Virus record (IMG/VR): IMGVR_UViG_3300043418_000114
Span: 300,248-364,247 of that record
Strand: one strand, 5' to 3'
Length of the DNA stretch: 64,000 nt
Part shown: one piece after another, positions 26,001 through 63,235 of the stretch
Numbering within the stretch: the first letter of the stretch is position 1
Layout of the letters: each line of letters opens with the position of its first letter
Position numbers and translations under genes: made by a program
Notes under the pieces: model-generated
What the model was told of the DNA's origin: nothing
The model's database searches: none
The model's input: only the letters and a program-made list of their open reading frames with translations

Positions 26001-29000
26001 TCACAAGTTGAGACACCAACCCAAGTTGGCGTGTTTGTCATTGATCAATATACTCAAGTATCCACAACGATGTATGTTGGATTAGACTACACAGTTGATT
26101 GGGTCAACAAAGTGATCGTGTTGAACGCTCCATTGAGCTTCACTACTCCTGGAAACAGTGATTCATTGCGTATCGATATCTATGAAACTGGCAACGGTGA
26201 TCAGTTAGTTAAGTCTAACACTGAAACCGATCCGATTCGTCCAAACGAGACCACTGGCTTTGATGAAATCTTCTTGAATTGCAATTACAGTGCATCTATC
26301 TTCTTGGGTTCTGGTGTAATTAGACCTAATACTCAACCGATAGAAACACGTGCATTTGAGACAGAAGCTACAACAAATGCAATCAGTGTGGACGATACCA
26401 GTGATTTTGTCCTAAACAGCCCAATCACGTTCAGTGGTAATGTTTTCGGTGGCATCGTTGAAGATCAAATTTACTACGTAAAGACGATCAGCAATGCATC
26501 ACAGAAAATTACTGTATCAACTTCATATAATGTTACTACAGGTATCGCTGGTCCTACTTACCAATTGTCAGATGCTACTGGTAGCATGGAAGTCATCATT
26601 CAAGTTGGCTCTGGTCAAGTATGGACAGCGCCAGTTGTGTTGAACAATGGCGACAAGTTAGTGCTAGGTACAACAGGCTTCATCACAAGAACACGTGCTG
26701 ACCGCAACACAATTACAACTAATACAACTGGTGCGTTAATCGTTAATACACCAATCGTATTTGATGCAACTATGTTCGGTGGAGTAATTGTTCCAGGCCA
26801 GACATATTATGTCAATAGCATCTATGATGCGAACGAGTTTACTATCAGTGAAACATCTGGTGGTAGTACGTTACAATTGACAAATGCAACAGGTGGAGCA
26901 ACGTTTGTAACAAACGATTATGCATTTGGTATCGCTCCAAACGGCATCTCTGCGAAGATCATATTTGCTAATACATATGATCCAGTATTGCATTATATCA
27001 CGTACACTGTCTTTGGCGAAACTTATCCAGTTCAGTATGGTTACACATTACCAGAAACACAGTATTTTATCGCCAATGGCACACAGTCAGTATTTGCGTT
27101 GACTAACTATGTTGGCGATGTAAATGCCGAGAATGCAATTGTGGAAGTTGATGGTCGTCGTTTAACGATCACTGCATACACAATCAACACTACCACGAAC
27201 CAATTGGTATTGAATAGTGCACCTACTGCTGGTTCACGTGTTGCTGTAACGTCATACAATAACACAGATCGTCAGTATTTGAATACTCAGTACAACATCA
27301 CTGGAGTAGCTGGCGCAACAGCAGGAACTTATGTCATTGGTAGTACTACACACTTGACAGGCACATATGACCAGGACACCCCAACTGTACAGACATATGA
27401 TGAAAATTCTCCTTCTGTTGTTTTATATGATGAAGTACTTGATTATCTAACATTGTCATCGGGTAGTACCTCTACATTGACTATCAACAGTAACATTGTC
27501 TTCCAGGCACCTACTATCGGTGGTTTAATTGCGGGCCAATCATACTATGTCACGAGCATTCTAAACAGCACTGACTTTACCGTGTCTGCTCAAGTTGGTG
27601 GCACACCGGTGACGGTTACGACTGATTCTGGTTCAATGACAGCGGTTGTCAATGGCTTGACTGTCGCACCAATTGTTGATATTGACAACAGCCTAACAGC
27701 GCCATTAGCTATCACCAATGTATCTGCTACTGCGAGTGGAACTAACTACATTACCTGCACGGATACGACTGATATGGTAGTAGGTCAGACTGCACAGTTC
27801 AAGAGTGCATCATTGACCAGCTTTGGTGGAATTGATTTGACAGGCACTGTTTACTTTATCAAGACAATTGTTGACTCCACTACATTCACCATTGCCGATC
27901 AATATGGAGTGACAATCACATTGTCAACCGATTCTGGCAACATCGTTGTTTATGTAGGTGGCCTCGAGGCAGTTCGTGTAACTACTGGAATTAACCACAA
28001 CTTGACAACGAACCAAGTGGTTCGCATCGATGGTACACGTGGCTCTGTCCAGTTGAATAACAACACATACTATGTTCGAGTTATCAACAACACTCAATTC
28101 GACCTGTATACATCAGCATACAACCCTGTATTGAATGCAGTGAATTTCCCAGTAACTACAATCAGTGCATATACCGGTGGCGGCTATGAATGGTTAACAG
28201 GATTGTTTACAATCTACACCACGATTGCAACTGCAACTACTTCAGGTGTCAACACGATCACTGTAAATGATACTACTGGATTGATTCCACAAACTCCTAT
28301 TATATTCACAACAACTAACACAGATGTTGGCACTGATGTATTAGGTGGAATCATTGCAGGACAGACTTATTACATCCTTGCAGTAATCGATGGTACAACA
28401 TTGACTATTTCTGATACACGTGATTCATTAGATGCAGTCACATTGACAACTGACACCGGCTCAGTCAAGGTGTCCCAATGGGAGCAAATGAACGTTGATC
28501 GTCTATGGGTAACAGTTAATGGTTATCGTATCCCATCAAGTAATTTGTACTTGAATTCAGATAACGATTTGAGTATCTTAACCGAGATCCAAACCGGCGA
28601 TGAGGTGGTTATCACTAGCATGATGCCAAGTGCTACTCCGAATGAACAGGTATACCTAACGAATGTATCTACAACCAACCAAGCATCAGTATATCGTGCT
28701 GGTACCGGTACCCGTACATGGCTAACTCATCCATTGTCCAATACAGACGAAACTATCTATGTTCATGATGTTACTCACTTAACTGATAACGTCATCCAGG
28801 AAGTAGTTGCGCCAGCTCCAGTGAATGGCAGTATCATGATTGGCTTAAATGCTGATAAAAACTTGATTAGTCAAGTAATTGTCTATAATAACACAACCGA
28901 TCTGTTGGTGCCTTCTACTGATTATAGCATTGTCTTGGTTGATACTGCTCCTCAGATTCAAATTACTACTGGAGTCTCCACTGGCGATAGCATCACGGTT

Positions 29001-29291
29001 ACAGTTCTAGTTGGAAACTTGATTTATCTAAATGGTGAGCAAATCCGTTTCACTAGTGTGGATGTATTGACTAACTCGATCACTGGCCTACAGCGTGGAA
29101 CGAATGGAACAGGTGTTACCGCACTAAGTCCGGAGTTTACAGAGGTATATGGTTTGTTATCTGGAAATCTAATGGACGATGCATCCTACGCTGAAACCTG
29201 GAATTCCTACAATTATGACCCAGTTGACGGAGATCCACTACAGATCAGTACAACAACAGGGGCAAATTTCTTAAATGTCAACCGTAATTGA
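11088..29291 (+). CDS. Giant 6067-aa virion structural protein (gp7-position baseplate/fibre scaffold) with beta-propeller-like segments and about 13 beta-rich repeat modules
   Basis: Uninterrupted 18.2-kb ORF after gp6; YINEVKPYH wedge-like motif; FG..VAIS/GAP propeller blades; SxDGxTW Asp-box blades; repeated GG(I/L)xxxxxYYV modules; rich in T, S, N and V. Confidence 0.75.
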   Translation: MANRIRTLNFLPEIFQTPTNAQFLSATLDQLVDQPNVARMQGFIGSKFGYGINAKDYYVTEPTKVRTDYQLEPGVVFTKANETTAQDFISYPGIVDALKLEGGVTNNNNRLFNSQFYSWDSFTDLDKIINFNQYYWLPEGAPSVNVSNSVVYNATDYIVTNLANEYLISSPANIQGDINPTLTLLRGGTYSFTVSQPSQFWIQGAPGVTGFSPTQPNVQTRDVLGVSNNGATAGVVTFTVPQKDAFAEYNFPSGGNVGVVSSLPFAQVNGARLADLPNGIDGVTSLAGLTVLFYNTGVVDEMGFTSKFYDTTLYDENGGVTYVEPGTSADFNNYEGGYYSPVNSNFYTISYVGDPSDPILYLTPTSPIPTNQSITATFGTEWIGRQFFKNVNGDIQIIPYNSAILDTLYYQDGSNPDKVGAMRIIDSNYTNKLNVTTDILGHKQYTATNGVVFTNGLKVTFSGDIFPTSYKSGEYYVQGVGTAIELIATTDLVSPGLFSEGTYIPYDIVPYDTTNYDSTLYIPVTQDYITIARDAINKNAWSRSNRWFHIDVINASATYNNNPSIVTQYATPENKAKRPIIEFYPNLRLFNSGVYGKAPVDFIDFRTDDAFETVEGATNYYPDVAGWTTNTASLVGITAQQTTTVVVSSSDISGQFTVGQYVADSLGILPEDAFISDIEVVSGVTTITITWTSAALTFSTTDMSLVSADTTLSNYGLFPGARIVFASDKNLFTRNKIYVAEFSILSPGATPVITLTEAADGEVLVDDQTAVYRGYNYQGKDFYFDGDAWIQGQQKTTVNQPPRFDVFDTNGISFGDIVSYLGTSFTGTTLFQYGIGSGTNDSVLGFPIRYSNIDNVGDISFDVSFNNDTFTYVEGIKPITLAVNTGYVYNYTTRTDYVRQLGWQTAEAPSEQYQLFSFDYVAGTDPSFICDIPANLTTEWPVVQVYINNVIQSRTSYTYASTGINTLVALSSAPTIDTVVQILILSTEVSPTAYYTIPVNLNNNPLNENLTTVSVGDIRGQYQSIFYNNPNTTGTVFGSNNYRDLGNLVPWGNRIIQNSASLVLPGTFLRKQDHNLFNSLQYNSNEYIKFKTLLVDTVNNTDYNIYMTPATMLDDALDQMSATKIESAPFFWSDMIPSKAPYITNTYSFANSLDVSIYPLSHVYNFETANYNGVLVYLTRNGTTIQLIKGVDYTVSVDAPSLTVTYGLLPNDQITINEYNQTYGSYVPNTPTKLGLYPATVPNVFLDTGYQKPTYFIVGHDGSFNKLYGSYDPETGKLQDFRDQVLFEYETRVYNNLKLSNAIPVQAYEVLPGFFRNTDYSYDEVLQIYSESFLNWVGQNRIDYKTQYFTNGNQFTYNYRDSGNKLNGAPIEQGYWRGVYQYFYDTSIPDIAPWEMLGYRNMPTWWTDRYGPAPYTSDNLVLWTDLQNGYDYNDGNSFTTTTYARPGLLNIIPVDSAGNLVSPFVSIVGNYDNNLFKADWQVGDVGPAEFSYRRSSSWPFDLMRILALTKPAEFFNLAVDLDNYKYNVEFNQYLVNDRSHLNISNIEVYGNGTAKTSYLNWIVDYEKQVGIDATTQISNLFQQLDVRLVYRLAGFSDKAMLKFYVEKSSANSNNSSLLIPDESYQVLLYDNQPFEQLVYSGLIVQVSQYGFKVFGNSQTNAYFTTYAPKNNGNTSTITIEKSTVKLANDYTNIEVKVPYGIELHSVQEVSQFIASYGAYLVDKGLVLDQSENGLTLNWEQMVAEFMYWSQMGWEVGSIVTLNPAATFLSINKDSNVVQPLTIQKQNFVLNQNLYPIQMSNLSVVRDGTLFTVQPMNQGDTLAYGQFNISNFEHGIVFDNTTLFNDTIYNLVTGLRQNRISVRGSKTADWNGTIDAQGFILNQDNVIDWDPTFKYTTGSIVKYKNKYWTALTIIQPSVKFDETQWKQTNYDEIQKGLLPNPSARSYESTLYYDINRANLETDADLLSFSLIGYRPRDYLALADLTDITQVNVYKNLIRNKGTLNAASAFKGANLPQGGIDYDIYENWAIKAGEFGGTLNDNFIQFRLNESELTGNPTTVGLTNGLVSNDVEQEVPLYSLFNYGMPITDVNVLPTVPTEDPSLLYPTAGYVNFNDVKLASYYYSGLTAAVNGNGTPVPIDQLYVRDYLWLADYLADWQVYTPLSLGSIVEAKNNLNGTVTITFSAPHNLTKYQLFGIVNFDPQVNGYYLVTATVNPYKVIINANLNPSITTITGQGVGFMMQNQRTDKPSDIGTLPLLNNEFTKNKVWVDTNTDGGWAVYRKSLNYQYSDAVTKQGSITFGDAVAHTNNVGYLVGDAGLGELYRYTYNALLKEYLLTGTITNGASFGSTIAYSGDTFVVSEPTSGTPKVYVYDLVQNNDVDELQLTQTISAPSGCANWGSSVAISGDKNWMYISDLTHNPGRVYVYRKSQLTGLYVQVTYLTDSSLTSYMAGFGTSISTDYYGDTIVVGAPNYRFNTDHLNWGQSYIYNRLYQNIEAQYTNNFGAPQALSVNIQLNSWTVSTNGTATGSSGITVDSSSGMAVDMPVTFSGSILSSGAISANVVYYIKSIPDGTHIKISRTRGGPEIALNASSGSMTVTAQSTPIFVAVNGSVLTDSQYFMIGSTLYVIAVLKAGDIVNVSSGEFVLSQTLNNDQDPSTGVEYGYSTATNTYASEILIGAPFELNNSVEGAVHRYTNGGEKYGMLVATQTASVLSARTILLNGYAVVIPSGYVNDAATAINSANLTNISASVVNNLLVIQLVNNDLATPNNKLTFVATDAAAYGDLGIVPYTETQLITNPHAGPVSQFGNAIKFNESNSIVISAPTATRYSATTFDFTDDESDNDTVFDNNTTQWIDTFANAGAVYMFDYLSNFNETLTNVGQFVYAQSINSEKLVYGAQPMYGTSLDFNQGVVVVGTPGFMSGVIDGDVTVYVNPTGDQDWSVYRQSSSIVDIERIQNIQLFSAETNNTLDNLDYMDPLQGKLLGAIRENIDVVSNIDPAFYTTGSNTGGLTWGADKVGQLWFNTSTVRFVNYHQDDLNYNAKYWGSIFPGSDVAVYSWISSNVVPSAYTGPGTPFDVGSYTTQYVINAEGTLTPVYFFWARNTNIVFTKQGNTLADSTLEQYISSPINTGISYLAPLLPNVFALYNIQEFLNATDTVLNVGFSTGNNNDVGHNLYNLIRANYADDFLPGLPSVKTGKEPHSLYARLLDSLSGTNLTGAIVPDPYLPKAVQYGVLARPNQSFFINRFGALQNYIQYINSVLLQYPFVETTNSTFLFKLGDINPSTGLPFFDTSAYVNTVNWWAPGYNDNTKSSVQVSIYADLATLTVPSGTIATVAMNGTGSAETYILDASGTWTRIGLANGTIQISDAIWNYPSASIGFGDNFFDTTPFDTYPSEETRYIVRAINEEIPTDLLIVRNKALILLFEYIQSETGESQNYLPWLNKTSFIDVSHTIRELLPYRVFQSDNQDFLSGYINEVKPYHVVIKEFLFKYTGTDVFEGDITDFDLPAQYNTASQQFISPELVYSNPSTDSQYLPSDPIWQTAPYSQWFANHGLSITGQPDFLMTTLASYVSLNSSTLVVANAYGLPVTGVIQIDDEQIAYSSLNRDNNTLAGLTRGYNGTATTTHIPGANIFMDLPPVVVLNTGRGYIEPPKVTAYIDTTVYPEPTVAAILEPIMDLDKVIGVNVINAGQGYAVLPQIIIEPSVIVPFNSTQVSVITDTIELYSPLLQTGDLVRYAVTEGSEAIGGLVDGQQYYVNVLEIVPVVTVALFNNYADAINNNSRIALQSTGAGMQSLSVVATASCITSASPVRETQIAMRFDRTSYNSQVVDWLPGSYYGSFYAGDYYNGDSVASSSIQLQSTEPPIDSILASANGAAFEILAVDNVQETTWSGRTRDLVSTTSTGNVIAIVPSSGGAPASGTITATTGFYIGMPVKFEGAVAGTGLNFDQVYYVKTIVSTGFTVSDTISNGVPGTVVTLNNQTISSAGATCLIGEVTNRALLTIDYSGIRKITNTTATTNTVTVPLNIAGKGGTSGFYTGLPIFFVGENPIGGIVSNNTYYVTTVIDDQTFTMSTTATPTMLNVTATVGATDRVIVESTLELHVNDPVIFTGTTFGDIVAGTQYYVATIVNGTAITLSQTVNGGTFNLTDGSGSCTLTIQVNVTQLTTDSGSMTMNINLPVSPGQVNGQQFTLYKTSGSYPTISGTNGDLLTRTITSALATVNRVCLDNYTGGITNIYAGMQFNVSDNIGGLTTGTNYTVTGEGTTSIVVTNTSSSGNKLTCTNTNVLYVDMPIVFTGTSLGGISLNTYYYVQDITSSTQFTIATSPGGSAITVTQDNGTMNGIGDQYITVSNSLSNETKTVTLTQYINPANDPVFTISYMLGGYFAEITDAGEGFAINNTIFVPGSDIGGVDGVNDLTMTVASVTSSGAITNVICTGTPAGAVNQYYFKVVDADQVEVCSDPLLRVPVSGINFPYVGVTTTPSLIQGDYALLPEPFYFNSSIVKYNNRVYECIVSNNDSTFVIGKWKLLQSDSRRLNALDRIIGYYQPTINMPGRDLTQLVAGITYPNSTYKGNAFDPNQEFALDTILQDQPFYPNDITMSGIVWNGLTYVVSSDATNYSAALMSATSADWAINKLSNIPLNTTDLIYAGGKYVMTTNNTATPVLTSTDGVVWSASTHYTNTVPGTVMLSSVAYNNGVYVAVGDVAVTSTDLITWEQTYNFTNGLTNMLSGVTYMYTAGFTGFIAVGTGQQVVNSNTVAVTVVRTSVDGYDWREVTFPGVATGLNSIASNNQIAVAVGNNNVIYTTFNTNQWFVQTTVGTDNLNYVTYINNLFVAVGDNGVVKSSPDGVTWTDYSTGTTSNLSSVTYSVDRSEYVVVGDNNTILLSPDLTTWTNNPVFNVAPTVYDVQGDPFVSGYGPEEMVPGVVTDTLMMTITTRPGTNWEAEEYAHVGYNVVSMQLSPTSGTQTRYSFASQVETPTQVGVFVIDQYTQVSTTMYVGLDYTVDWVNKVIVLNAPLSFTTPGNSDSLRIDIYETGNGDQLVKSNTETDPIRPNETTGFDEIFLNCNYSASIFLGSGVIRPNTQPIETRAFETEATTNAISVDDTSDFVLNSPITFSGNVFGGIVEDQIYYVKTISNASQKITVSTSYNVTTGIAGPTYQLSDATGSMEVIIQVGSGQVWTAPVVLNNGDKLVLGTTGFITRTRADRNTITTNTTGALIVNTPIVFDATMFGGVIVPGQTYYVNSIYDANEFTISETSGGSTLQLTNATGGATFVTNDYAFGIAPNGISAKIIFANTYDPVLHYITYTVFGETYPVQYGYTLPETQYFIANGTQSVFALTNYVGDVNAENAIVEVDGRRLTITAYTINTTTNQLVLNSAPTAGSRVAVTSYNNTDRQYLNTQYNITGVAGATAGTYVIGSTTHLTGTYDQDTPTVQTYDENSPSVVLYDEVLDYLTLSSGSTSTLTINSNIVFQAPTIGGLIAGQSYYVTSILNSTDFTVSAQVGGTPVTVTTDSGSMTAVVNGLTVAPIVDIDNSLTAPLAITNVSATASGTNYITCTDTTDMVVGQTAQFKSASLTSFGGIDLTGTVYFIKTIVDSTTFTIADQYGVTITLSTDSGNIVVYVGGLEAVRVTTGINHNLTTNQVVRIDGTRGSVQLNNNTYYVRVINNTQFDLYTSAYNPVLNAVNFPVTTISAYTGGGYEWLTGLFTIYTTIATATTSGVNTITVNDTTGLIPQTPIIFTTTNTDVGTDVLGGIIAGQTYYILAVIDGTTLTISDTRDSLDAVTLTTDTGSVKVSQWEQMNVDRLWVTVNGYRIPSSNLYLNSDNDLSILTEIQTGDEVVITSMMPSATPNEQVYLTNVSTTNQASVYRAGTGTRTWLTHPLSNTDETIYVHDVTHLTDNVIQEVVAPAPVNGSIMIGLNADKNLISQVIVYNNTTDLLVPSTDYSIVLVDTAPQIQITTGVSTGDSITVTVLVGNLIYLNGEQIRFTSVDVLTNSITGLQRGTNGTGVTALSPEFTEVYGLLSGNLMDDASYAETWNSYNYDPVDGDPLQISTTTGANFLNVNRN

Positions 29292-36848: not shown

Positions 36849-38116
36849 GTTCACCATTCTTTAAAAAGTACTTGCTAGAAAAAAGCGATACCTTTTGTAT
36901 GGCTCCATGGACGCACATTCACACTACACCAACTGGTGTAGTTACTCCTTGTTGCATTTCAAAATCATGCGGATCACAGATTGGCATGGCTAATGCTAGA
37001 AACGTGTCATTAATGGAAGCAGTCAATTGTAACCAGATGAAGAAACTACGTCTGGACATGCTCAATGGTGTCAAGAATCCTGAGTGCGCCGCCTGTCATT
37101 CACATGAAGAACAGGGTGTTAAGAGTTTTCGAATGAACATGAATTCAGACTTTGCTCACCATTTCGACGAATTGATTGAATACACTAATGTCGATGGATC
37201 ATTGAATGAATTTCAAATGAAATATTTTGATATTCGATTTTCAAATATCTGTAACTTCAAATGCCGAACCTGCAATTCGAGTTTCAGTACTCAATGGGAA
37301 CAGGAAGACCTTAAATCAAAGTTATTTCATGCACGAATTGTTCCTAAGAATGACAATCCAGAGTTCTTGGCTGACGTTATTGGTCAGATTGAACACATGG
37401 AGAAAGCATACTTTGCTGGTGGTGAACCCTTAATCACAGAAGAACATTACATTCTACTAGAGGAAATGATTAAGCAAGGTCGTACAGATATTAAACTGAG
37501 CTATAATACCAATCTAAGTAATTTGAAATTCAAAGACAAAGACCTGCTGGCATTATGGAAAAACTTTGATAACCCAATTTATATTTCTGCAAGCATTGAT
37601 CACTATGGTGAACGTGCTGAGTATATTCGTTCAGGCACAGATTGGGGCAAAGTAGAAGCTAACTTTAAAAAAGCCAAGAAGACACCATACATCAACCTAC
37701 AAATGAACACGGTATTGAGTGTGTTCAATTACTTGACCATTTATGAGTTCTATGAGTATTTGATAGACAAGAAACTCTATACTCCACGAGACGGAACATT
37801 CTCGTTATATAACATGAGTACGCCTCCTCATCTTACGGCACATATCTTGCCATCTGATTTGAAACAAATTGGCATAGAAAAGATGGACAAAACAATAGAA
37901 CTATTCACTGCGAAGAAATTCCAACCAGAACAAATCAACCAGTTGGCTATCACGACACCATGGGTACAGTCACAAGACACCTGGAACGAACATAAGAAAC
38001 TTTTTAAAGAAGAAGTAAAGCGATTAGATAAGATCAGGGGAGAAGACTTTCAGAAAGTTTTTCCTGAATTAGCAGTGCTACTAGATGATGAACGCAAACG
38101 CCTTTGGCCCGTATGA
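36845..38116 (+). CDS. Radical SAM protein with N-terminal twitch/SPASM-like domain
   Basis: FCMAPW...PCC...CAAC, CNFKCRTC and AGGEPL. Confidence 0.88.
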   Translation: MSSPFFKKYLLEKSDTFCMAPWTHIHTTPTGVVTPCCISKSCGSQIGMANARNVSLMEAVNCNQMKKLRLDMLNGVKNPECAACHSHEEQGVKSFRMNMNSDFAHHFDELIEYTNVDGSLNEFQMKYFDIRFSNICNFKCRTCNSSFSTQWEQEDLKSKLFHARIVPKNDNPEFLADVIGQIEHMEKAYFAGGEPLITEEHYILLEEMIKQGRTDIKLSYNTNLSNLKFKDKDLLALWKNFDNPIYISASIDHYGERAEYIRSGTDWGKVEANFKKAKKTPYINLQMNTVLSVFNYLTIYEFYEYLIDKKLYTPRDGTFSLYNMSTPPHLTAHILPSDLKQIGIEKMDKTIELFTAKKFQPEQINQLAITTPWVQSQDTWNEHKKLFKEEVKRLDKIRGEDFQKVFPELAVLLDDERKRLWPV

Positions 38117-57361: not shown

Positions 57362-60300
57362 ATGCTAAGAGATGTATTTTATTATGGGAAGAAACCTAAC
57401 GTTCATCCCAGAGAAAAGTTTGCAATAAATTTAGATGATGCCAAGCGGCAATCATCCACTGAACACTTCTGGATCATAAACGAGTTTTGTGACTATAAGG
57501 GATTTGACTGGGACTTTGATTTTGAATTCTTGCCTGACGAAGATGTGTGGGCAGAAGAACACAATAACGTATGGCCAAGTGTACATCAAAAAGATAGTGG
57601 CACGTGGCTATGCAACACTGATAACAACGAAGCATTGACAATTTATCGTGCCGATGTTGAACCACTAAAGCGTAAAAAAGAAGCATTCGATCACTGGGTA
57701 GTTAACTATGCTATCACAGATGGGTTTGATTTTTCATGGCATCATGACCCGTCAGATCCACCATTCATTTATGTTTGGGGTAATCAATTTTACCCTGGGA
57801 CAGTTATGCCAACAGTTGAATATCATGTTGAAGGCGCAACTGAACGCAAATACATGGATTTGTTTGTGCCTACATTAGCACAGAACAAAGATAGATTCGA
57901 AGTACTAGACGATATTGAAGATTTTGATTATAGTTGGATGCCAGATCCAACTAGTCCACCCTACATTTACGTATGGGGCAATCAATGGAACTCAGCAGAA
58001 GATAAAGCGGCTATAAAATATACAGTCGAGGGCGCGACTGAATACAAGTATATGGCTACACGTGCAAAACGTAGAGCTAATATGCAGTATTGGACCGTGC
58101 CGGATAATGTTGATGTTAGTGATTTCGATTTTAGTTGGGAACCTAACCCTCATGATCCACCATTCGTGTATCAATTCGGCACTCAGCACCAACGCACGGG
58201 TGGCCCTGTTTATACTATTCCAGGAGCAACAGAAGTTAAGTACGTTGATGTAATTCATGCAATGGCTCCTGTTGATATGACATATTGGCACGTGCCAGAC
58301 AATCTAAAAATAGTTGACTTCGACTTCTCATGGCATCCAGATGCACTAGACGGGCCATACATTTATGTTTTTGGAACACAATGGGCACTGACTGGTGGTC
58401 CAAAATACGTAGTGCCAGGCGCAGATCAAAAGAAGTACATTGATGCAATCATTGCCACTGTGCCACCAAACCTAGCTAACTGGGAAATTCCTACTGATAT
58501 TGCAGTAGATGAATTTGATTTCTCATGGCATCCATACGAAGATGATGAGCCCTACATCTATCAGTTTGGCACTCAGTGGCAGAAGACTGGCGGCCCACGT
58601 TACGTTACACCTGGTACTGATGAAATGTCTCCCATCAAATATGTAGACACTCGCATTATCAAAGCTAGAAAACTTCCTAAGCGTGATAACTGGACAGTGC
58701 CAGATACCATTGAAGAAGACAGTATTGATTTCTCATGGCATCCTGATGACACTGAACCAGCATTTGAGTATCAGTTTGGTACTCAATGGCAGAAGACAGA
58801 TGGTCCAGTTTACACCGTGCCAGGTGCAACACAATCTAAGTTTGTATCAGTCAACAAAGCACGTATCAAACCTAACATGAGTAATTGGCAATTGCCAGAG
58901 GGACTTGATGCTAAGAAGTTTGACTTTTCATGGCACCCTGACAGCACAGTTCCTGTATATGTTTACCAGTTCGGTACATTACTAGATGATATTCACCTAG
59001 AAGACGGCCCACGTTATGTAACACCTGGCAATGATGGTCATGTTGTGTACATGGAAAACGACGAGATTCTTACTGATGCCATCGAATATCCAAAGTACTA
59101 TATCACAACTACATTAGATGATTTGATTCAGCAACACAAAGATGAAACATTCTGGGCGTTACGTGAAAACATTGATTACGCTGATTTTGATTTTGCATGG
59201 AGACCTACGAAAGAAAACGTCTTCCACATTAACGCATTTGGTTCACCTGATAGCGAATCAACTCAGTCATATCTTGTCAATGGCAAGATGATTCAGCAAG
59301 GTCATTCTCATATCAATTTCATCGAGAATATTAAGCTAGACGAAGAATACTTGGCCAAATTGTTTAAGCCAGTTAGTATGTTCTTTGTTGATCGTGGTAA
59401 CAGTGAAACCCAAGAACGATTTGATAGATTGAAGCTACGTTTCCCTGACATTCAAAAGACTAGATTCTTGAACACATGGGTAGATACAATCAACCGTTGT
59501 ATCAATCGTAGTTCAACTGAATTGTGCTGGATTCTGAACAGCGAACTTGACTATAGCGATTTCAACTTTGAGTACTATCCTAATCCATGGCAAATGAAAA
59601 TGGTCCACGTGTTTGGTACTCAATGGTCTCATTGGGGCACAACGTTTATGGTCAATCGTGATTCGTTTGCAGAAGATACCAAGTACATTAAAGTCATTGA
59701 ACACTTGAGTAACTTGAACTTTGTAAAGAATCGCAGAGCAAAGGCCACTAACGTTCTATATGACGTTATCTACATTGATCATGGCACTACCGATATTACT
59801 CCTGGCACAAACGTAATTGTGTATGAAGATAGCTATCTCACAACGTTCAAAAAGATGTTGGAGAAGTTACCTACAAAGAAAGAACACTATGTTTGGGTTT
59901 GCTCAAGCGTATGTGATTATGCTGACTTTGATTTCACTTACATTTGTGATCCATTTGCACGTGAGCAATTGCACGTATTCCCTAGTGACAAACAAAAGTT
60001 TGGCGATACATTCTTAATCAACGTAAACAAGTTGCGTGAGTTGATTACGGACATGGAGAAACTAGAAGATTACGAAAAGATCAGCTATAACCAGCACCAA
60101 AGAGCAAAGCGATTGCCTGCTCCAACTATAATTACAAAGGAAGATACACATGTCTCTACTATTCACACTGATTTTAATTGGCCTTATGCTACGTTTGTCA
60201 CGGAAGACAACGCCGAAATAGAATCTGTTTACTCAGAACCAATGAGCCTATGGGCACCTGAACACAAGAATATCACAATCACCAGTACCGGCGGCACTCG

Positions 60301-61066
60301 CATTGTTGTACCGCGTGAGGCCAAAGAACATGTTAAGCGTGAATTGTATGATTACCCATACATCATCACCAATAGTAAATTGGCTAAGTCTACACCAATG
60401 GACATTGTATTCTTGTCGAACGGCGAGACAGGAGCAGAGGAAAACTATGAGCATTTGTTGAAAACAACACATGGATTAGCCAATCGTGTTGTTCGAGTCG
60501 ATGGAGTTAAAGGTCGTGTTCAAGCGTATCATGCCGCACTTGAAGCAAGTAACACACCTTGGGCTTTCACAGTCTTTGCGAAGTTAAAAGTCAGTAACAA
60601 ATTTGATTGGAACTGGCAACCAGATAGACTACAGATTCCTAAGCATTATGTATTTCATGCTAAGAATCCGGTGAACGGACTAGTCTATGGTCACCAAGCA
60701 ATGATTGCCTATAACAAGAAACTTACACTTGCCAATCAAGGCAAAGGTCTAGACTTTACAATGGACGATGAACATGAAGTTGTTGAAATTGTCTCAGGTG
60801 TTGCAAACTTTAATACTGATGAATGGTCAACCTGGCGTACTGCATTCCGTGAAGCACTCAAACTACGTGCTAACACAGACGAAGTAAGTAAGAATAGACT
60901 AGAGTTTTGGCTAACAGTTGGGTCAGGTAAGTTCTCTCAGTATAGTATTGATGGAGCATCTGACGCAGTTAAGTACTATGAGGAAGTCAATGGAGATTTT
61001 GAGAAATTGAAGTTGAGTTATGAATGGGAATGGCTACGCGAATTCTATCAGCGCAAGTATAAATAA
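57362..61066 (+). CDS. 1234-aa repeat protein with a C-terminal glycosyltransferase-like domain
   Basis: Seven tandem ~66-aa FDFSWxP repeats; C-terminal DIVFLSNGE..A..N, RVDGVKGR..AYH, NPVNGLVYG and WRTAFRE motifs shared with 34489-35445. Confidence 0.65.
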   Translation: MLRDVFYYGKKPNVHPREKFAINLDDAKRQSSTEHFWIINEFCDYKGFDWDFDFEFLPDEDVWAEEHNNVWPSVHQKDSGTWLCNTDNNEALTIYRADVEPLKRKKEAFDHWVVNYAITDGFDFSWHHDPSDPPFIYVWGNQFYPGTVMPTVEYHVEGATERKYMDLFVPTLAQNKDRFEVLDDIEDFDYSWMPDPTSPPYIYVWGNQWNSAEDKAAIKYTVEGATEYKYMATRAKRRANMQYWTVPDNVDVSDFDFSWEPNPHDPPFVYQFGTQHQRTGGPVYTIPGATEVKYVDVIHAMAPVDMTYWHVPDNLKIVDFDFSWHPDALDGPYIYVFGTQWALTGGPKYVVPGADQKKYIDAIIATVPPNLANWEIPTDIAVDEFDFSWHPYEDDEPYIYQFGTQWQKTGGPRYVTPGTDEMSPIKYVDTRIIKARKLPKRDNWTVPDTIEEDSIDFSWHPDDTEPAFEYQFGTQWQKTDGPVYTVPGATQSKFVSVNKARIKPNMSNWQLPEGLDAKKFDFSWHPDSTVPVYVYQFGTLLDDIHLEDGPRYVTPGNDGHVVYMENDEILTDAIEYPKYYITTTLDDLIQQHKDETFWALRENIDYADFDFAWRPTKENVFHINAFGSPDSESTQSYLVNGKMIQQGHSHINFIENIKLDEEYLAKLFKPVSMFFVDRGNSETQERFDRLKLRFPDIQKTRFLNTWVDTINRCINRSSTELCWILNSELDYSDFNFEYYPNPWQMKMVHVFGTQWSHWGTTFMVNRDSFAEDTKYIKVIEHLSNLNFVKNRRAKATNVLYDVIYIDHGTTDITPGTNVIVYEDSYLTTFKKMLEKLPTKKEHYVWVCSSVCDYADFDFTYICDPFAREQLHVFPSDKQKFGDTFLINVNKLRELITDMEKLEDYEKISYNQHQRAKRLPAPTIITKEDTHVSTIHTDFNWPYATFVTEDNAEIESVYSEPMSLWAPEHKNITITSTGGTRIVVPREAKEHVKRELYDYPYIITNSKLAKSTPMDIVFLSNGETGAEENYEHLLKTTHGLANRVVRVDGVKGRVQAYHAALEASNTPWAFTVFAKLKVSNKFDWNWQPDRLQIPKHYVFHAKNPVNGLVYGHQAMIAYNKKLTLANQGKGLDFTMDDEHEVVEIVSGVANFNTDEWSTWRTAFREALKLRANTDEVSKNRLEFWLTVGSGKFSQYSIDGASDAVKYYEEVNGDFEKLKLSYEWEWLREFYQRKYK
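57695..59070 (+). repeat. Seven tandem ~200-nt coding repeats (W.VP....FDFSWHPD...PYIYQFGTQWQKTGGP.Y.VPGA...KY)
   Basis: Visible in the protein, and in the DNA as recurring tt(c/t)tcatggca and tttggcactcagtggcagaagac-like strings; boundaries are approximate. Confidence 0.85.
61058..61065 (+). promoter_or_regulatory. Perfect T4 late promoter box TATAAATA
   Basis: Exact consensus, 4 nt upstream of ATG 61070. Confidence 0.7.
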
Positions 61067-61162: not shown

Positions 61163-61729
61163 ATGCGCTTTAGTGAAATACTATCAGAATTGCGTGGCAT
61201 CAAAGGCGATGTAGCTCACCTTGAACCCGATGCAGGACATGAGTCCTGGGAAGAACTATTATCACAGCATGGATTTCAGCCAATTGGCAGAGGCTATCAT
61301 GGTCAAGTCTATCGTAATCCAAAGTTACCATATGTACTGAAAGTCTTTACTAAGCAAGACGTTGCATATCAGCAATGGGTAAAAGATTGCAAGGGACCAC
61401 TACTTGGTAATCCTTATGTTCCAGTGTTTCGTGGTGATGTAACGAGACTAACACCTGATGCAGTGGCCATTCGTATGGAAACACTTGAACCAGCATCACT
61501 CAAGCAACTTGAACTTGCTAGACAAATTCAAAGTATGCTATTGAGTAGCAGACGAGAAAAACGTGATTGGACGACATATTCATTGGCCAAAGAAATGGAT
61601 GATAGTCTATTTGAGGCAGTTAGTTACATCCAGTCAGAAGCTACCAAACACAATTACATGTTAGACATGCGTGGCGCAAACGTCATGCAACGGTCAGGTC
61701 AGCTGGTAATTATTGACCCATTAGCTTGA
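61163..61729 (+). CDS. Minimal protein-kinase-like (PKL-fold) protein
   Basis: IGRGYHGQVY Gly-loop, YVLKV lysine, DMRGANVM catalytic loop and IIDP (DFG-equivalent). Confidence 0.7.
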   Translation: MRFSEILSELRGIKGDVAHLEPDAGHESWEELLSQHGFQPIGRGYHGQVYRNPKLPYVLKVFTKQDVAYQQWVKDCKGPLLGNPYVPVFRGDVTRLTPDAVAIRMETLEPASLKQLELARQIQSMLLSSRREKRDWTTYSLAKEMDDSLFEAVSYIQSEATKHNYMLDMRGANVMQRSGQLVIIDPLA

Positions 61730-61754
61730 CTTTTAAAATAAAAAGATATATACT
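61726..61754 (+). promoter_or_regulatory. Sigma70-type promoter of the tmRNA gene
   Basis: TTGACT (61726-61731), 17-nt spacer, TATACT (61749-61754); predicted start near 61761. Confidence 0.8.
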
Positions 61755-61760
61755 ATTGAG

Positions 61761-61825
61761 AACAGCGTAAACTGTTATTAAGAAAAGTGTTCTGGGCGCG
61801 GGTTCGACTCCCGCCAGGTCCACCA
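61761..61825 (+). ncRNA. ssrA: Two-piece (permuted) tmRNA, acceptor piece
   Basis: GCGGG-TTCGACT-CCCGC T-arm followed by CAGGTCC-ACCA; TGTTCT pairs with AGGGCA of the coding piece; the 5' end is inferred from the promoter. Confidence 0.88.
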
Positions 61826-61837
61826 TAAGGAAGTTTA

Positions 61838-62044
61838 ATGAGTCGTAGTAGTCCGTGGTTAAGTAAAGATAGTCCAAAAACTCTCAAGGAGTTTTGGATT
61901 GAACTACACCCAGATTGGGTAGAGATTGATGGTCAGAACTTAACTGAGGATAGATGGAACGACATTAAACCAGAGACAATGGTTGCCATGAAGCGAGAAT
62001 ATGTTAAGTGTTCTGAACTTCTTGGTTGGCAAGTTTCTTTATGA
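61838..62044 (+). CDS. 68-aa hypothetical protein encoded inside the tmRNA intervening segment
   Basis: TAAGGA SD immediately after the CCA with a 6-nt spacer; the ORF spans 207 of the 220 intervening nt; its stop ends one nt before tmRNA G1. Confidence 0.6.
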   Translation: MSRSSPWLSKDSPKTLKEFWIELHPDWVEIDGQNLTEDRWNDIKPETMVAMKREYVKCSELLGWQVSL

Positions 62045-62045
62045 T

Positions 62046-62226
62046 GGGCCTGCCATGGTTTCGACAGGGCAAAGAGTAGGGATAATGGCGCTCGGCAAGG
62101 TAGAAGCCGTAGGATTGGGGGAACCCGGTCGAAGACAACAAAAAACTTAAATGCAAACGATTCCGTTTTCGCATTAGCGGCCTGATAACCGCTTAGGGTA
62201 AGACATACCTCGTAACAGAAACTCAG
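62046..62226 (+). ncRNA. ssrA: Two-piece (permuted) tmRNA, coding piece; tag (A)ANDSVFALAA at 62153-62185
   Basis: GGGCCTG pairs with CAGGTCC, giving the G3-U70 alanine determinant; GGTTTCGAC D-loop motif; TTAAAT-GCA resume context; tag ends in ALAA then TGA TAA; the 3' end is approximate. Confidence 0.92.
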
Positions 62227-62251
62227 AACCCGCTTCGGCGGGTTTTCTTTT
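62227..62251 (+). terminator. Rho-independent terminator after the tmRNA
   Basis: AACCCGC-TTCG-GCGGGTT followed by TTCTTTT. Confidence 0.9.
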
Positions 62252-62298
62252 GTCAACGTAACGTAAGGCTGATACGTTGTATATGTATAGGAGCTAAT

Positions 62299-62540: not shown

Positions 62541-63092
62541 ATGAAGAAAATTTTAGCAATCTTGGCTCTTGCCACATTCGGTTCTGCTTTCGCCGCAGAT
62601 TTTGTCGCTGTTGACGTTGACAATGTTCAAGGTCGTAAAGGCGCATCTGACAGCACAGCACAATATGTTCGTGCAGGCAAAGGCTTCGGAGACTATCAAT
62701 TCAACTTGCAATCACGCACTGCTACTGTTACCGGTGGTGGTTTGTTGAATAGCATGGAAGTCACAGCCGCTAAGAACTCTGTTAACGTTGCGGGTATCAC
62801 TCCATTCGTTGGTGTTGGTCATGACAACGGTTTCAACGGCGCTCGTAGTGCAGGTTACAATTATGGCCTAGTTGGTGCAACTTATGGTCGCCCAGTTGGT
62901 CCAGGCTTCTTGTTGCTAGGTGCAAAAACCCGTGTTGGTTCTACTGAATCAGTTAACACAAAGCAGACTGTTAGTTTCGCTACTTACAGCGTACCAGTCG
63001 CAAAGAATGTTTCTGTGAATTTGAATGCTAGCCGTTCAGCACAGGATATCAAGGAAAAGGCTTTCGGTCTTGGCTTGACATTCGGTTTCTAA
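62541..63092 (+). CDS. Outer-membrane beta-barrel protein (small porin-like)
   Basis: Sec signal peptide MKKILAILALATFGSAFA; alternating amphipathic strands; C-terminal beta-signal FGLGLTFGF ending in Phe; AAGGA RBS; TAAATA box at 62496. Confidence 0.8.
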   Translation: MKKILAILALATFGSAFAADFVAVDVDNVQGRKGASDSTAQYVRAGKGFGDYQFNLQSRTATVTGGGLLNSMEVTAAKNSVNVAGITPFVGVGHDNGFNGARSAGYNYGLVGATYGRPVGPGFLLLGAKTRVGSTESVNTKQTVSFATYSVPVAKNVSVNLNASRSAQDIKEKAFGLGLTFGF

Positions 63093-63160: not shown

Positions 63161-63235
63161 GCGCTAGAGGCTAATTGGTATAGCAAGGGTCTCTAAAGCC
63201 TGAGAGAGTCGGTTCGATTCCGGCCTAGCGCACCA
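63161..63235 (+). tRNA. tRNA with CUA anticodon (amber suppressor); amino acid identity unknown
   Basis: Acceptor GCGCTAG/CTAGCGC plus ACCA; D-arm GCTA/TAGC; anticodon loop CT-CTA-AA (anticodon 63193-63195); T-arm GTCGG-TTCGATT-CCGGC. The anticodon stem is weak. Confidence 0.8.

What the first reader, a model, noticed from the sequence alone, without database searches (positions are those of the whole stretch)
61824..62045. Protein-coding gene nested in the tmRNA intervening segment, with its RBS locked in the processing stem
Seen: the 220-nt segment between CCA and G1 is filled almost exactly by SD plus a 68-aa ORF. Its ends pair over 13 bp (61824-61836 CATAAGGAAGTTT with 62031-62043 AAGTTTCTTTATG, three G-U pairs). 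This helix extends the acceptor stem and sequesters both the SD and the last codons. Known: intervening segments of two-piece tmRNAs are normally short non-coding spacers removed by RNase P and 3' trimming. Inference: the excised spacer doubles as an mRNA or cargo slot, so that translation and tmRNA maturation compete or are coupled. This is the best candidate here for an undescribed system; the slot may hold variable cargo genes in related phages.
Basis: partly seen in the sequence, partly recalled or inferred. Interest (0 to 1): 0.88.

Follow-up and report, generated by a model that had tools for sequence, protein, structure and literature searches.

The report
Gene cassette slot inside phage tmRNA
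A 364-kb freshwater phage has a two-piece tmRNA gene whose normally discarded spacer holds a real 68-residue protein gene, and related phages hold more than thirty unrelated genes at exactly the same spot, so the spacer works as a swappable gene slot that I could not find described anywhere.

Summary
The window holds a circularly permuted tmRNA gene (Rfam 113.7 bits; tag ANDSVFALAA). Its 220-nt intervening sequence (IVS, 61826-62045) is filled by a Shine-Dalgarno (SD) site plus a 68-codon ORF. The IVS ends form a 13-bp helix on top of the acceptor stem.

The ORF is a real gene: omega is 0.1-0.25 in divergent pairs, it has an in-frame codon indel, and a 46%-identical homologue lies beside another phage tmRNA.

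- Among 89 unique phage IVSs (37-382 nt), all 28 of at least 130 nt carry one slot-filling ORF.
- The ORFs are unrelated to each other: thioredoxin, DUF2061, tiny membrane peptides and many orphans.
- They share the same start and end sequences.
- tmRNA bodies 94-100% identical carry different cargo or none.
- The same cargo sits in bodies only 57-68% identical.
- The helix covaries strongly, with many G-U pairs, so it is an RNA structure.

Not shown: translation, the processing sites, any coupling between the two, and what the 68-aa protein does. Predicted RBS occlusion is moderate, not a lock.

I found no description of protein-coding tmRNA spacers in the searchable literature. Verdict: a real feature and a new variant of a known kind, of high interest.

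The parts
61726..61754 (+). Sigma-70-type promoter, TTGACT - 17 nt - TATACT, the only promoter for the whole unit
   Evidence: 10 of 12 consensus positions. No + strand promoter-like site inside the IVS. The same TTGACT-N17-TATACT motif precedes the homologous ORF plus tmRNA in L016 (read).
61764..61825 (+). tmRNA acceptor piece: T-arm 61798-61814, acceptor 3' strand 61815-61821, discriminator A61822, encoded CCA 61823-61825
61826..62045 (+). Intervening sequence (IVS) of 220 nt, the cassette slot
   Evidence: IVS lengths in related phage tmRNA genes run from 37 to 382 nt.
61827..61833 (+). Shine-Dalgarno site AAGGAAG, 4 nt before the ATG. It lies inside the 5' strand of the helix.
   Evidence: An SD-like 4-mer is present in 34 of 38 ORF-bearing IVSs and 5 of 51 ORF-less IVSs (Fisher 1e-14).
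61824..61836 (+). 5' strand of the 13-bp processing helix: CA of CCA plus the first 11 IVS bases
61838..62044 (+). Cargo gene: 68-aa protein of unknown function (ATG to TGA)
   Evidence: Purifying selection; AF2 model with pLDDT 83.8; no family or fold match.
62031..62043 (+). 3' strand of the processing helix. It covers the second and third bases of Gln65, codons Val66-Ser67-Leu68, and the first two bases of the stop.
62046..62255 (+). tmRNA coding piece: G1 and acceptor 5' strand 62046-62052, tag reading frame 62153-62188 (ANDSVFALAA, then TGA TAA)
62225..62256 (+). Intrinsic terminator: 9-bp GC-rich hairpin plus T run

Best explanation
The window carries one member of a widespread family of phage-borne two-piece tmRNA genes. 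In this family the spacer between the encoded CCA and G1 has become a standard expression slot for small accessory genes.

Proposed sequence of events:
1. One promoter makes a precursor of about 490 nt: acceptor piece, then IVS, then coding piece.
2. The IVS begins 1-2 nt after CCA with an SD site and has its start codon 9-14 nt after CCA.
3. It usually ends with ...Ser-Leu-stop, one base before G1.
4. Its two ends pair over 13 bp. With the A73-U(-1) pair and a conserved C/A mismatch, this continues the acceptor stem.
5. I infer that the cargo is translated mainly while the RNA is being made, before the 3' strand of the helix exists, and perhaps again after excision.
6. The finished precursor closes the helix over the RBS.
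7. RNase P at G1 and 3' processing at CCA then release the two tmRNA pieces and a minimal mRNA.

A ribosome terminating at 62042-62044 must cover G1 and the acceptor 5' strand. Translation of the last codons and folding of the tRNA-like domain therefore cannot happen at the same moment.

The cargo here is a 68-aa soluble protein of unknown function. Cargo is exchanged between phages by recombination in the conserved tmRNA flanks and helix strands.

Shown: the anatomy, coding selection, helix covariation, cargo diversity and swapping.
Inferred: translation, its timing, the cleavage sites and the recombination route.
For: tmRNA identity.

Single promoter and terminator.

The ORF is real:
- 15 loci carry it inside the IVS.
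- Omega is 0.07-0.27 in pairs with dS above 0.2, and there is an in-frame codon indel.
- The AF2 model has pLDDT 83.8.
- A 46%-identical homologue, P0006, lies directly upstream of another permuted tmRNA whose IVS is a 73-nt non-coding hairpin.

Slot:
- 28 of 28 unique IVSs of at least 130 nt hold a slot-spanning ORF. The joint chance for 16 unrelated cargos is at most 1e-35.
- Cargos include thioredoxin (PF00085, E 4e-21) and DUF2061 (E 4e-21).
- Other cargo families show omega of 0.06-0.24 in five of six pairs and 0.46 in the sixth.
- 101 loci carry the fixed cassette start; they group into 31 sequence families.
- The stop ends exactly 1 nt before G1 in 53 of 88 loci.

Helix: strong covariation with abundant G-U and U-G pairs, so it is RNA-level and strand-specific.

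SD association: Fisher 1e-14.

Swapping:
- L003 (68-aa cargo), L120 (thioredoxin) and L096 (61-nt empty hairpin) share a 100% identical acceptor piece and 94-97% identical coding pieces. The L003/L120 identity breaks just after the ATG and resumes at the AAGTTTCTTTATGA end.
- The same 68-aa cargo, at least 90% identical in DNA, sits in tmRNA bodies only 57-68% identical.
- Loci sharing the window's downstream gene carry other cargos.

RBS opening cost across 30 cassettes: nascent 4.1, full precursor 10.9, excised 6.0 kcal/mol. The full precursor is highest in all 30.

Metatranscriptome contigs bridge CCA into the ORF and the ORF into G1.
Against: - There is no direct evidence of translation, of the cleavage sites, or of an excised IVS RNA.
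- The RNA evidence consists of low-depth assembled contigs without direction, and DNA carry-over cannot be excluded.
- The helix is weak (-9.9 kcal/mol), so occlusion of the RBS may matter little in vivo.
- The function of the 68-aa protein is unknown.
- No recombinase or other agent explains how unrelated ORFs came to sit between identical end sequences.
- 13 of 88 cassettes lack an in-frame stop before G1, which the simple model does not explain.
- All cargo-bearing examples are uncultivated. The cultured relatives I found have ORF-less IVSs.
Confidence: 0.78

Rival explanations
1. The 68-aa protein is a dedicated partner of the phage tmRNA, for example a cofactor, a modulator of host SmpB or RNases, or a maturation factor. 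It sits in the IVS so that protein and RNA are made in fixed proportion. On this view the slot is a functional operon rather than a general cargo site.
For: Its only distant homologue, P0006, is also next to a permuted tmRNA. It sits behind the same promoter type and beside a PCRF/RF-1-domain gene. The phage has no SmpB of its own. This cargo is the most frequent one in my sample (16 of 101 loci).
Against: The same slot holds thioredoxin, DUF2061, membrane mini-peptides and more than 25 orphan families. Near-identical tmRNAs work with another cargo or none. There is no similarity to any translation factor or RNA-binding fold. The L016 copy keeps the cassette-type end GTTTCTTTATGA, so it may simply be a displaced cassette.
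Confidence: 0.15
2. The IVS cassettes are selfish mobile elements. A trans-acting enzyme recognises their imperfect inverted-repeat ends, and they use the tmRNA gene as a safe harbour, much as introns and genomic islands do.
For: Cassette boundaries are identical around unrelated ORFs. The same cargo occurs in divergent tmRNA bodies. tmRNA genes are known targets of introns and islands (PMC11915505).
Against: No cassette encodes an endonuclease or recombinase. No tyrosine integrase is found in the 364-kb genome. The pairing relies heavily on G-U pairs, which would be mismatches in DNA hairpins and on the opposite strand. The repeat includes the CCA end and is continuous with the acceptor stem, as expected for an RNA processing helix. 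ORF-less IVSs have the same helix.
Confidence: 0.08
3. The IVS is only a long structured spacer. The open frame is a by-product of RNA-level constraint and is not translated.
For: The DNA of the IVS is unusually conserved, and synonymous variation is low at both ORF ends: 1 of 7 degenerate codons vary among codons 2-9 and 1 of 4 among codons 65-69, against 25 of 52 in the middle.
Against: Omega is well below 1 in divergent pairs. The frame is kept across an indel. The amino-acid homologue P0006 has different DNA. Bona fide Pfam families occupy the same slot. The SD site is present only when an ORF is present. The joint chance of the open frames is at most 1e-35.
Confidence: 0.03

Closest known systems
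Circularly permuted (two-piece) tmRNA genes of Alphaproteobacteria, a betaproteobacterial lineage, cyanobacteria and aquatic phages (Keiler et al. 2000 and Sharkady & Williams 2004, as cited in PMC9004378 and PMC3978253; phage Melnitz, PMC9004378; tmRNA database, PMC11915505)
   Same: Gene order (acceptor piece, IVS, coding piece), encoded CCA, G3-U70, tag frame ending in ALAA, and a single precursor cut by tRNA-processing enzymes. Several relatives also match the betaproteobacterial model RF01850.
   Different: In the described cases the IVS is a discarded non-coding spacer. In my bacterial control the three strong permuted tmRNAs span 205-223 nt in total. Here the IVS is 220 nt and coding, and in the phage family it is a variable cassette of up to 382 nt.
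Group I introns in the tmRNA T-loop, some carrying LAGLIDADG homing-endonuclease genes (PMC11915505)
   Same: A protein-coding ORF sits inside a sequence that is removed from a tmRNA gene transcript.
   Different: Different position (between CCA and G1, not in the T-loop). There is no intron fold (no Rfam intron hit) and no re-ligation. The cargo is not an endonuclease and differs from phage to phage.
Permuted tmRNA with a complete tRNA-Ala gene, or a repetitive element, in its IVS. Both are reported as unique oddities in PMC11915505.
   Same: They show that the IVS tolerates insertions that are removed by the same processing.
   Different: Those inserts are RNA genes or repeats, each seen once. 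Here there is a recurrent, standardised protein-coding cassette with SD, start and stop at fixed positions.
Phage morons and integron gene cassettes (my own knowledge, as analogies only)
   Same: Small accessory genes of unrelated function occupy one defined site and are exchanged between otherwise similar genomes.
   Different: There is no own promoter or terminator, unlike morons. There is no integrase or attC, unlike integrons. The constant ends are an RNA helix that belongs to tmRNA precursor structure.

Membership tests
Two-piece (circularly permuted) tmRNA | The acceptor (3') half of the tRNA-like domain is encoded upstream of the 5' half and the tag region, and is recognised by the permuted-tmRNA covariance model | tested here: met
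   RF04321 scores 113.7 bits against a gathering score of 47, model positions 1-213. ARAGORN calls a permuted tmRNA.
Two-piece (circularly permuted) tmRNA | Alanine identity (G3-U70 in a 7-bp acceptor stem), T-arm, and encoded or added CCA | tested here: met
   GGGCCTG (62046-62052) pairs with CAGGTCC (61815-61821) with a G-U at position 3. T-loop is TTCGACT. CCA is at 61823-61825.
Two-piece (circularly permuted) tmRNA | Tag reading frame that starts with an Ala resume codon and ends in a hydrophobic ALAA-type tail plus a stop | tested here: met
   ANDSVFALAA followed by TGA TAA at 62153-62188.
Two-piece (circularly permuted) tmRNA | Works with SmpB in trans-translation | not testable with these tools
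   No SmpB (PF01668) in the 364-kb phage genome. It would have to use the host's SmpB.
Two-piece (circularly permuted) tmRNA | The IVS is a short non-coding spacer (the usual state, not a strict criterion) | tested here: not met
   The IVS is 220 nt and holds a 68-codon gene under purifying selection. The bacterial control shows short IVSs.
Intron-borne ORF in a tmRNA gene (group I intron with a homing endonuclease gene) | Self-splicing intron fold in the T-loop, with a homing-endonuclease ORF | tested here: not met
   No intron family hit in the window. The insert lies between CCA and G1. The cargo has no endonuclease domain.
Integron-type gene cassette | Tyrosine integrase and attC/attI recombination sites | tested here: not met
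   No PF00589 match in the phage genome. The end repeats pair through G-U pairs, so the pairing is at the RNA level.
Phage moron | Accessory gene with its own promoter and terminator, inserted between conserved genes | tested here: not met
   No promoter-like or terminator-like site inside 61826-62045 on the + strand. The cargo uses the tmRNA promoter and terminator.

The most novel reading that the evidence does not exclude
The slot is built so that cargo output is gated by the same RNA processing and trans-translation that the tmRNA serves.

RNase P cutting at G1 would leave the cargo mRNA with its stop codon only one base from the 3' end (53 of 88 cassettes), or with no stop at all (13 of 88). 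Any 3' trimming then turns it into a non-stop message, and its product would receive the tmRNA degradation tag.

Cargo protein would therefore accumulate only from nascent or unprocessed precursor. Its level would report the balance between tmRNA maturation and rescue capacity: a self-limiting, one-burst expression device embedded in a structural RNA gene.
Probability: 0.15. Interest if true: 0.92.

Novelty: new variant of a known kind. Interest (0 to 1): 0.8.

Why it matters
tmRNA genes are among the most closely curated RNA genes, yet their spacer has been treated as junk to be trimmed away. This finding matters for four reasons.

1. A standardised, swappable protein-coding cassette in that spacer is a new way for phages to carry and express accessory genes.
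2. It is a natural case of an mRNA nested between the two halves of a structural RNA, with its RBS and last codons built into the processing helix. That gives a direct test bed for how translation and RNase P-type maturation interact on one transcript.
3. It exposes an annotation blind spot. Gene callers and tmRNA finders each mask the other's feature. Even the tmRNAs of cultured phages XacN1 and PA_L9 are unannotated.
4. It could serve as a compact design for expressing a small protein alongside an RNA.

Tried and rejected
Function of the 68-aa protein:
- Pfam and PHROGs gave nothing significant.
- ESM Atlas gave only weak feature hits, 0.58 or lower.
- Foldseek against PDB, AlphaFold DB clusters and BFVD gave no match with E below 3.
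- A profile search of 1.8 billion representative proteins found only its own cluster and P0006.

Occurrence outside uncultivated phages:
- No homologue in representative genomes of 185,579 species, nor in 50,697 GenBank phage records.
- blastn of the window's locus against GenBank phages matched only a T-arm in phage G.

Bacterial origin of the arrangement:
- 120 bacterial contigs share the 16-mer at the CCA junction, but none is a permuted tmRNA with this junction.
- Three arbitrary betaproteobacterial MAGs had no permuted tmRNA.

Other checks:
- Integron-like or mobile-element mechanism: no integrase.
- Phage SmpB: none.
- RNA ends: only assembled contigs were available, so cleavage sites could not be read.
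- A cassette-like helix around the L016 copy is at best 6 bp and is not in its predicted fold.
- Pfam on ten further cargo families gave no hits.
- Keiler 2000 and Sharkady & Williams 2004 are not held in the library. What they say about IVSs is taken from papers that cite them.

Full report
WHAT IS THERE

The window is the last 64 kb of a 364,247-bp viral record with direct terminal repeats, judged complete. It is a jumbo phage from a freshwater metagenome.

ARAGORN finds a permuted tmRNA at 61733-62276 on the + strand with tag ANDSVFALAA. The Rfam permuted-tmRNA model scores 113.7 bits against a gathering score of 47.

Reading the sequence gives these parts:
- T-arm 61798-61814
- acceptor 3' strand 61815-61821
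- discriminator A61822
- CCA 61823-61825
- a 220-nt intervening sequence (IVS) 61826-62045
- G1 at 62046, with a G3-U70 pair

A promoter with 10 of 12 consensus positions (TTGACT, 17 nt, TATACT) lies at 61726-54. The only terminator-like site is at 62225-46. Neither kind of site lies inside the IVS on the + strand. The unit is therefore one transcript of about 490 nt.

The IVS holds AAGGAAG at 61827-33, ATG at 61838 and TGA at 62042-44, which makes 68 codons. The 13-bp helix 61824-36 / 62031-43 appears in the predicted folds. It stacks on the acceptor stem through an A73-U(-1) pair and a single C/A mismatch.

IS THE ORF A GENE?

A word-indexed search of 5.8 billion proteins found five clusters at 78-88% identity. 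Further scans of viral and metagenomic contigs brought the total to 15 loci besides the window. Wherever enough DNA was present, the ORF lies inside the IVS of a permuted tmRNA.

Among 10 unique DNA versions:
- The frame is always kept, including across a one-codon insertion.
- Pairs with dS above 0.2 have omega of 0.07-0.27.
- One copy (L011) has a stop four codons early. It was made by a C-to-T change that still leaves a G-U pair in the helix.

An exhaustive profile search of 1.8 billion representative proteins found one distant relative, P0006 (E 4e-15, 46% identity). Its gene lies directly upstream of another permuted tmRNA, not inside it. It sits behind the same TTGACT-N17-TATACT motif, and that tmRNA has a 73-nt non-coding IVS.

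AlphaFold gives a confident small alpha/beta model (pLDDT 83.8). It has no match in PDB, AlphaFold DB clusters or BFVD and no Pfam or PHROG family. So it is a real protein of unknown function. It was not found in representative genomes of 185,579 bacterial and archaeal species, nor in GenBank phages.

THE SLOT

In the first alignment, the IVS was far better conserved than the tmRNA around it. That led me to collect phage tmRNAs by their CCA junction alone. ARAGORN called a permuted tmRNA in most of them, and I could measure the IVS in 99 loci, which gave 89 unique sequences of 37 to 382 nt.

- Every one of the 28 unique IVSs of at least 130 nt carries one ORF spanning the slot. 26 start with ATG, one starts with TTG, and one has no stop before G1.
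- Ten of the 83-99-nt IVSs carry a 21-26-codon ORF; at least nine of these encode hydrophobic mini-peptides.
- The ORFs are unrelated to one another. Examples are the 68-aa protein, an 84-aa thioredoxin (PF00085, E 4e-21), a 69-aa DUF2061 membrane protein in two diverged loci (E 4e-21), and proteins of 35 to 123 aa without known families.
- Keeping each start and end and shuffling the interior leaves the frame open with probability at most 0.09 per IVS. The joint chance for 16 unrelated cargos is at most 1e-35.
- Other cargo families also show purifying selection: omega is 0.06-0.24 in five of six pairs tested and 0.46 in the sixth.
- An SD-like 4-mer lies in the first 12 nt of 34 of 38 ORF-bearing IVSs, against 5 of 51 ORF-less IVSs (Fisher 1e-14).

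A second scan keyed on the cassette start itself ran to completion. With the earlier loci it gave 101 loci, 72 distinct proteins and 31 sequence families. A few of these are not in recognisable tmRNAs. The cassettes also occur in tmRNAs with other acceptor stems.

In 53 of the 88 loci where G1 was found, the stop codon ends exactly one base before G1. In 12 it ends 9-14 nt earlier. In 13 there is no in-frame stop before G1, and the frame runs 12-69 nt into the tmRNA.

SWAPPING

- L003 (68-aa cargo), L120 (thioredoxin) and L096 (61-nt ORF-less hairpin) have 100% identical acceptor pieces and 94-97% identical coding pieces.
- The identity between L003 and L120 stops just after the ATG and resumes at AAGTTTCTTTATGA.
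- Other such pairs are L028/L069, L008/L048, L029/L078 and L117/L125.
- Conversely, the 68-aa cassette, at least 90% identical in DNA, sits in tmRNA bodies only 57-68% identical, with different tags and even different T-loops.
- Loci that share the window's downstream gene carry other cargos or none.

The IVS is therefore exchanged independently of the tmRNA body. Homologous recombination in the conserved flanks is the simplest route, but that is an inference. How unrelated ORFs first came to lie between identical ends is not explained. The phage genome has no tyrosine integrase, and no cassette encodes a nuclease.

THE HELIX

All IVSs, coding or not, fold into a hairpin whose base continues the acceptor stem. 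I scored 18 ungapped positions over the 89 unique IVSs.

- Positions 0-12 are paired in 72-100% of sequences.
- Positions 5-12 each show 4-6 different standard pair types. Position 8, for example, has AT 44, TA 16, CG 11, GC 7, TG 4 and GT 1.
- Over positions 5-15 the paired fraction is 0.81. Shuffled partners give 0.54 +/- 0.013, and partners slid by 1-3 positions give 0.40-0.54.
- G-U and U-G pairs are common, so the structure belongs to the sense RNA and not to the DNA.
- Within the 68-aa family the few changes are one-sided but consistent with pairing: G-U to A-U, G-U to G-C, and A/C to G-C.
- Synonymous variation looks depressed at both ORF ends, but the numbers are small.

HOW IT MOST LIKELY WORKS

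The anatomy above is shown. What follows is inferred.

The predicted cost of opening the RBS of the window's cargo is about 2.5 kcal/mol in transcripts that end before the 3' strand. It is 6.7 in the full precursor and 3.8 in the excised IVS. Over 30 cassettes the means are 4.1, 10.9 and 6.0, and the full precursor is the highest in all 30.

The most economical reading has three steps:
1. Ribosomes load while the RNA is being made.
2. The completed precursor closes the helix over the RBS.
3. RNase P at G1 and 3' processing at CCA release the tmRNA pieces and a minimal mRNA that is again partly open.

The stop codon lies one base from G1. A terminating ribosome must therefore cover and unwind the acceptor 5' strand, so finishing translation and forming the RNase P substrate exclude each other at any instant. 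The helix is weak (-9.9 kcal/mol), so this is modulation and not a lock.

Metatranscriptome contigs bridge 61790-61944 and 61982-62072, the latter with no mismatch. This fits a transcribed precursor. However, the contigs are low in depth and carry no direction, and DNA carry-over cannot be excluded.

COMPARISON WITH WHAT IS KNOWN

- Two-piece tmRNAs in aquatic phages are known: 53 are counted in PMC9004378.
- The 2025 tmRNA database paper lists three gene forms and treats the IVS as sequence absent from the mature RNA. It reports as curiosities one IVS holding a tRNA-Ala gene and one holding a repeat, and homing-endonuclease ORFs only in T-loop introns (PMC11915505).
- Six literature searches found no mention of protein-coding IVSs. 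The subscription-only literature, such as Mao et al. 2009, could not be checked.
- In 151 genomes of one bacterial order, the three strong permuted tmRNAs span 205-223 nt, which means short IVSs.
- Cultured phages XacN1 and PA_L9 have the same kind of tmRNA, unannotated in their records, with 112-114-nt ORF-less IVS hairpins.

VERDICT

It is a member of the two-piece tmRNA family by every sequence criterion. Its spacer is a standardised, exchangeable protein-coding cassette, which I rate as a new variant of a known kind. Translation, the processing sites, the coupling between them, and the role of the 68-aa protein remain to be shown.

Noticed in passing
window 63161-63235: A tRNA with a CUA anticodon, an amber suppressor (ARAGORN labels it Pyl), lies 0.9 kb downstream of the tmRNA. 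None of 33 long + strand ORFs in the window ends in TAG (TAA 21, TGA 12). Cultured jumbo phage XacN1 likewise has two tRNA-Sup(CTA) genes about 1 kb from its permuted tmRNA.
   Followed up: partly
L020, L295, the L289 family and others (13 of 88 cassette loci): The cargo ORF has no in-frame stop before G1 and reads 12-69 nt into the tmRNA 5' domain. After RNase P cleavage these would be non-stop messages.
   Followed up: partly
L016:1443-1640 and L016:2476-2970: Upstream of the displaced 68-aa homologue and its tmRNA lie a 164-aa PCRF/RF-1-domain protein and a sub-threshold RNase P RNA-like match (archaeal model, 42 bits, E 1e-9).
   Followed up: no
L004, L005, L008, L009 (tmRNA T-arm): These tmRNAs have the T-loop GGCAGTG instead of the canonical TTCGACT, yet carry the same 68-aa cassette.
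   Followed up: no
L081/L132, L108, L047 (ORF-less IVSs): T-arm-like hairpins (GGTTCGAnTCC) lie inside the IVS. They may be remnants of tRNA genes in the slot.
   Followed up: no
L368 (AP018399.1, about 37201-37621) and L369 (PP869205.1, about 80300-80720): Cultured Xanthomonas phage XacN1 and Pseudomonas phage PA_L9 (Samunavirus) carry permuted tmRNAs (RF04321 at 123 and 116 bits). No tmRNA is annotated at these loci in the GenBank records.
   Followed up: yes
window 11088-29291: A single 6067-codon ORF.
   Followed up: no
window 57362-61066: A 1234-aa protein with about eight repeats of an FDFSWHPD...YxYxFGTQW motif.
   Followed up: no
window 62541-63092: A 183-aa protein with a signal peptide and a C-terminal Phe, which looks like a porin or beta-barrel protein. 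The gene is syntenic downstream of the tmRNA in several relatives, and Porin_4 hits appear near the tmRNA in other loci.
   Followed up: no
window 61163-61729: A 188-aa kinase-like protein directly upstream of the tmRNA promoter. Its best PHROG is the T7 gp0.7-type kinase, annotated as regulating RNase III and RNase E (E 1e-6).
   Followed up: no
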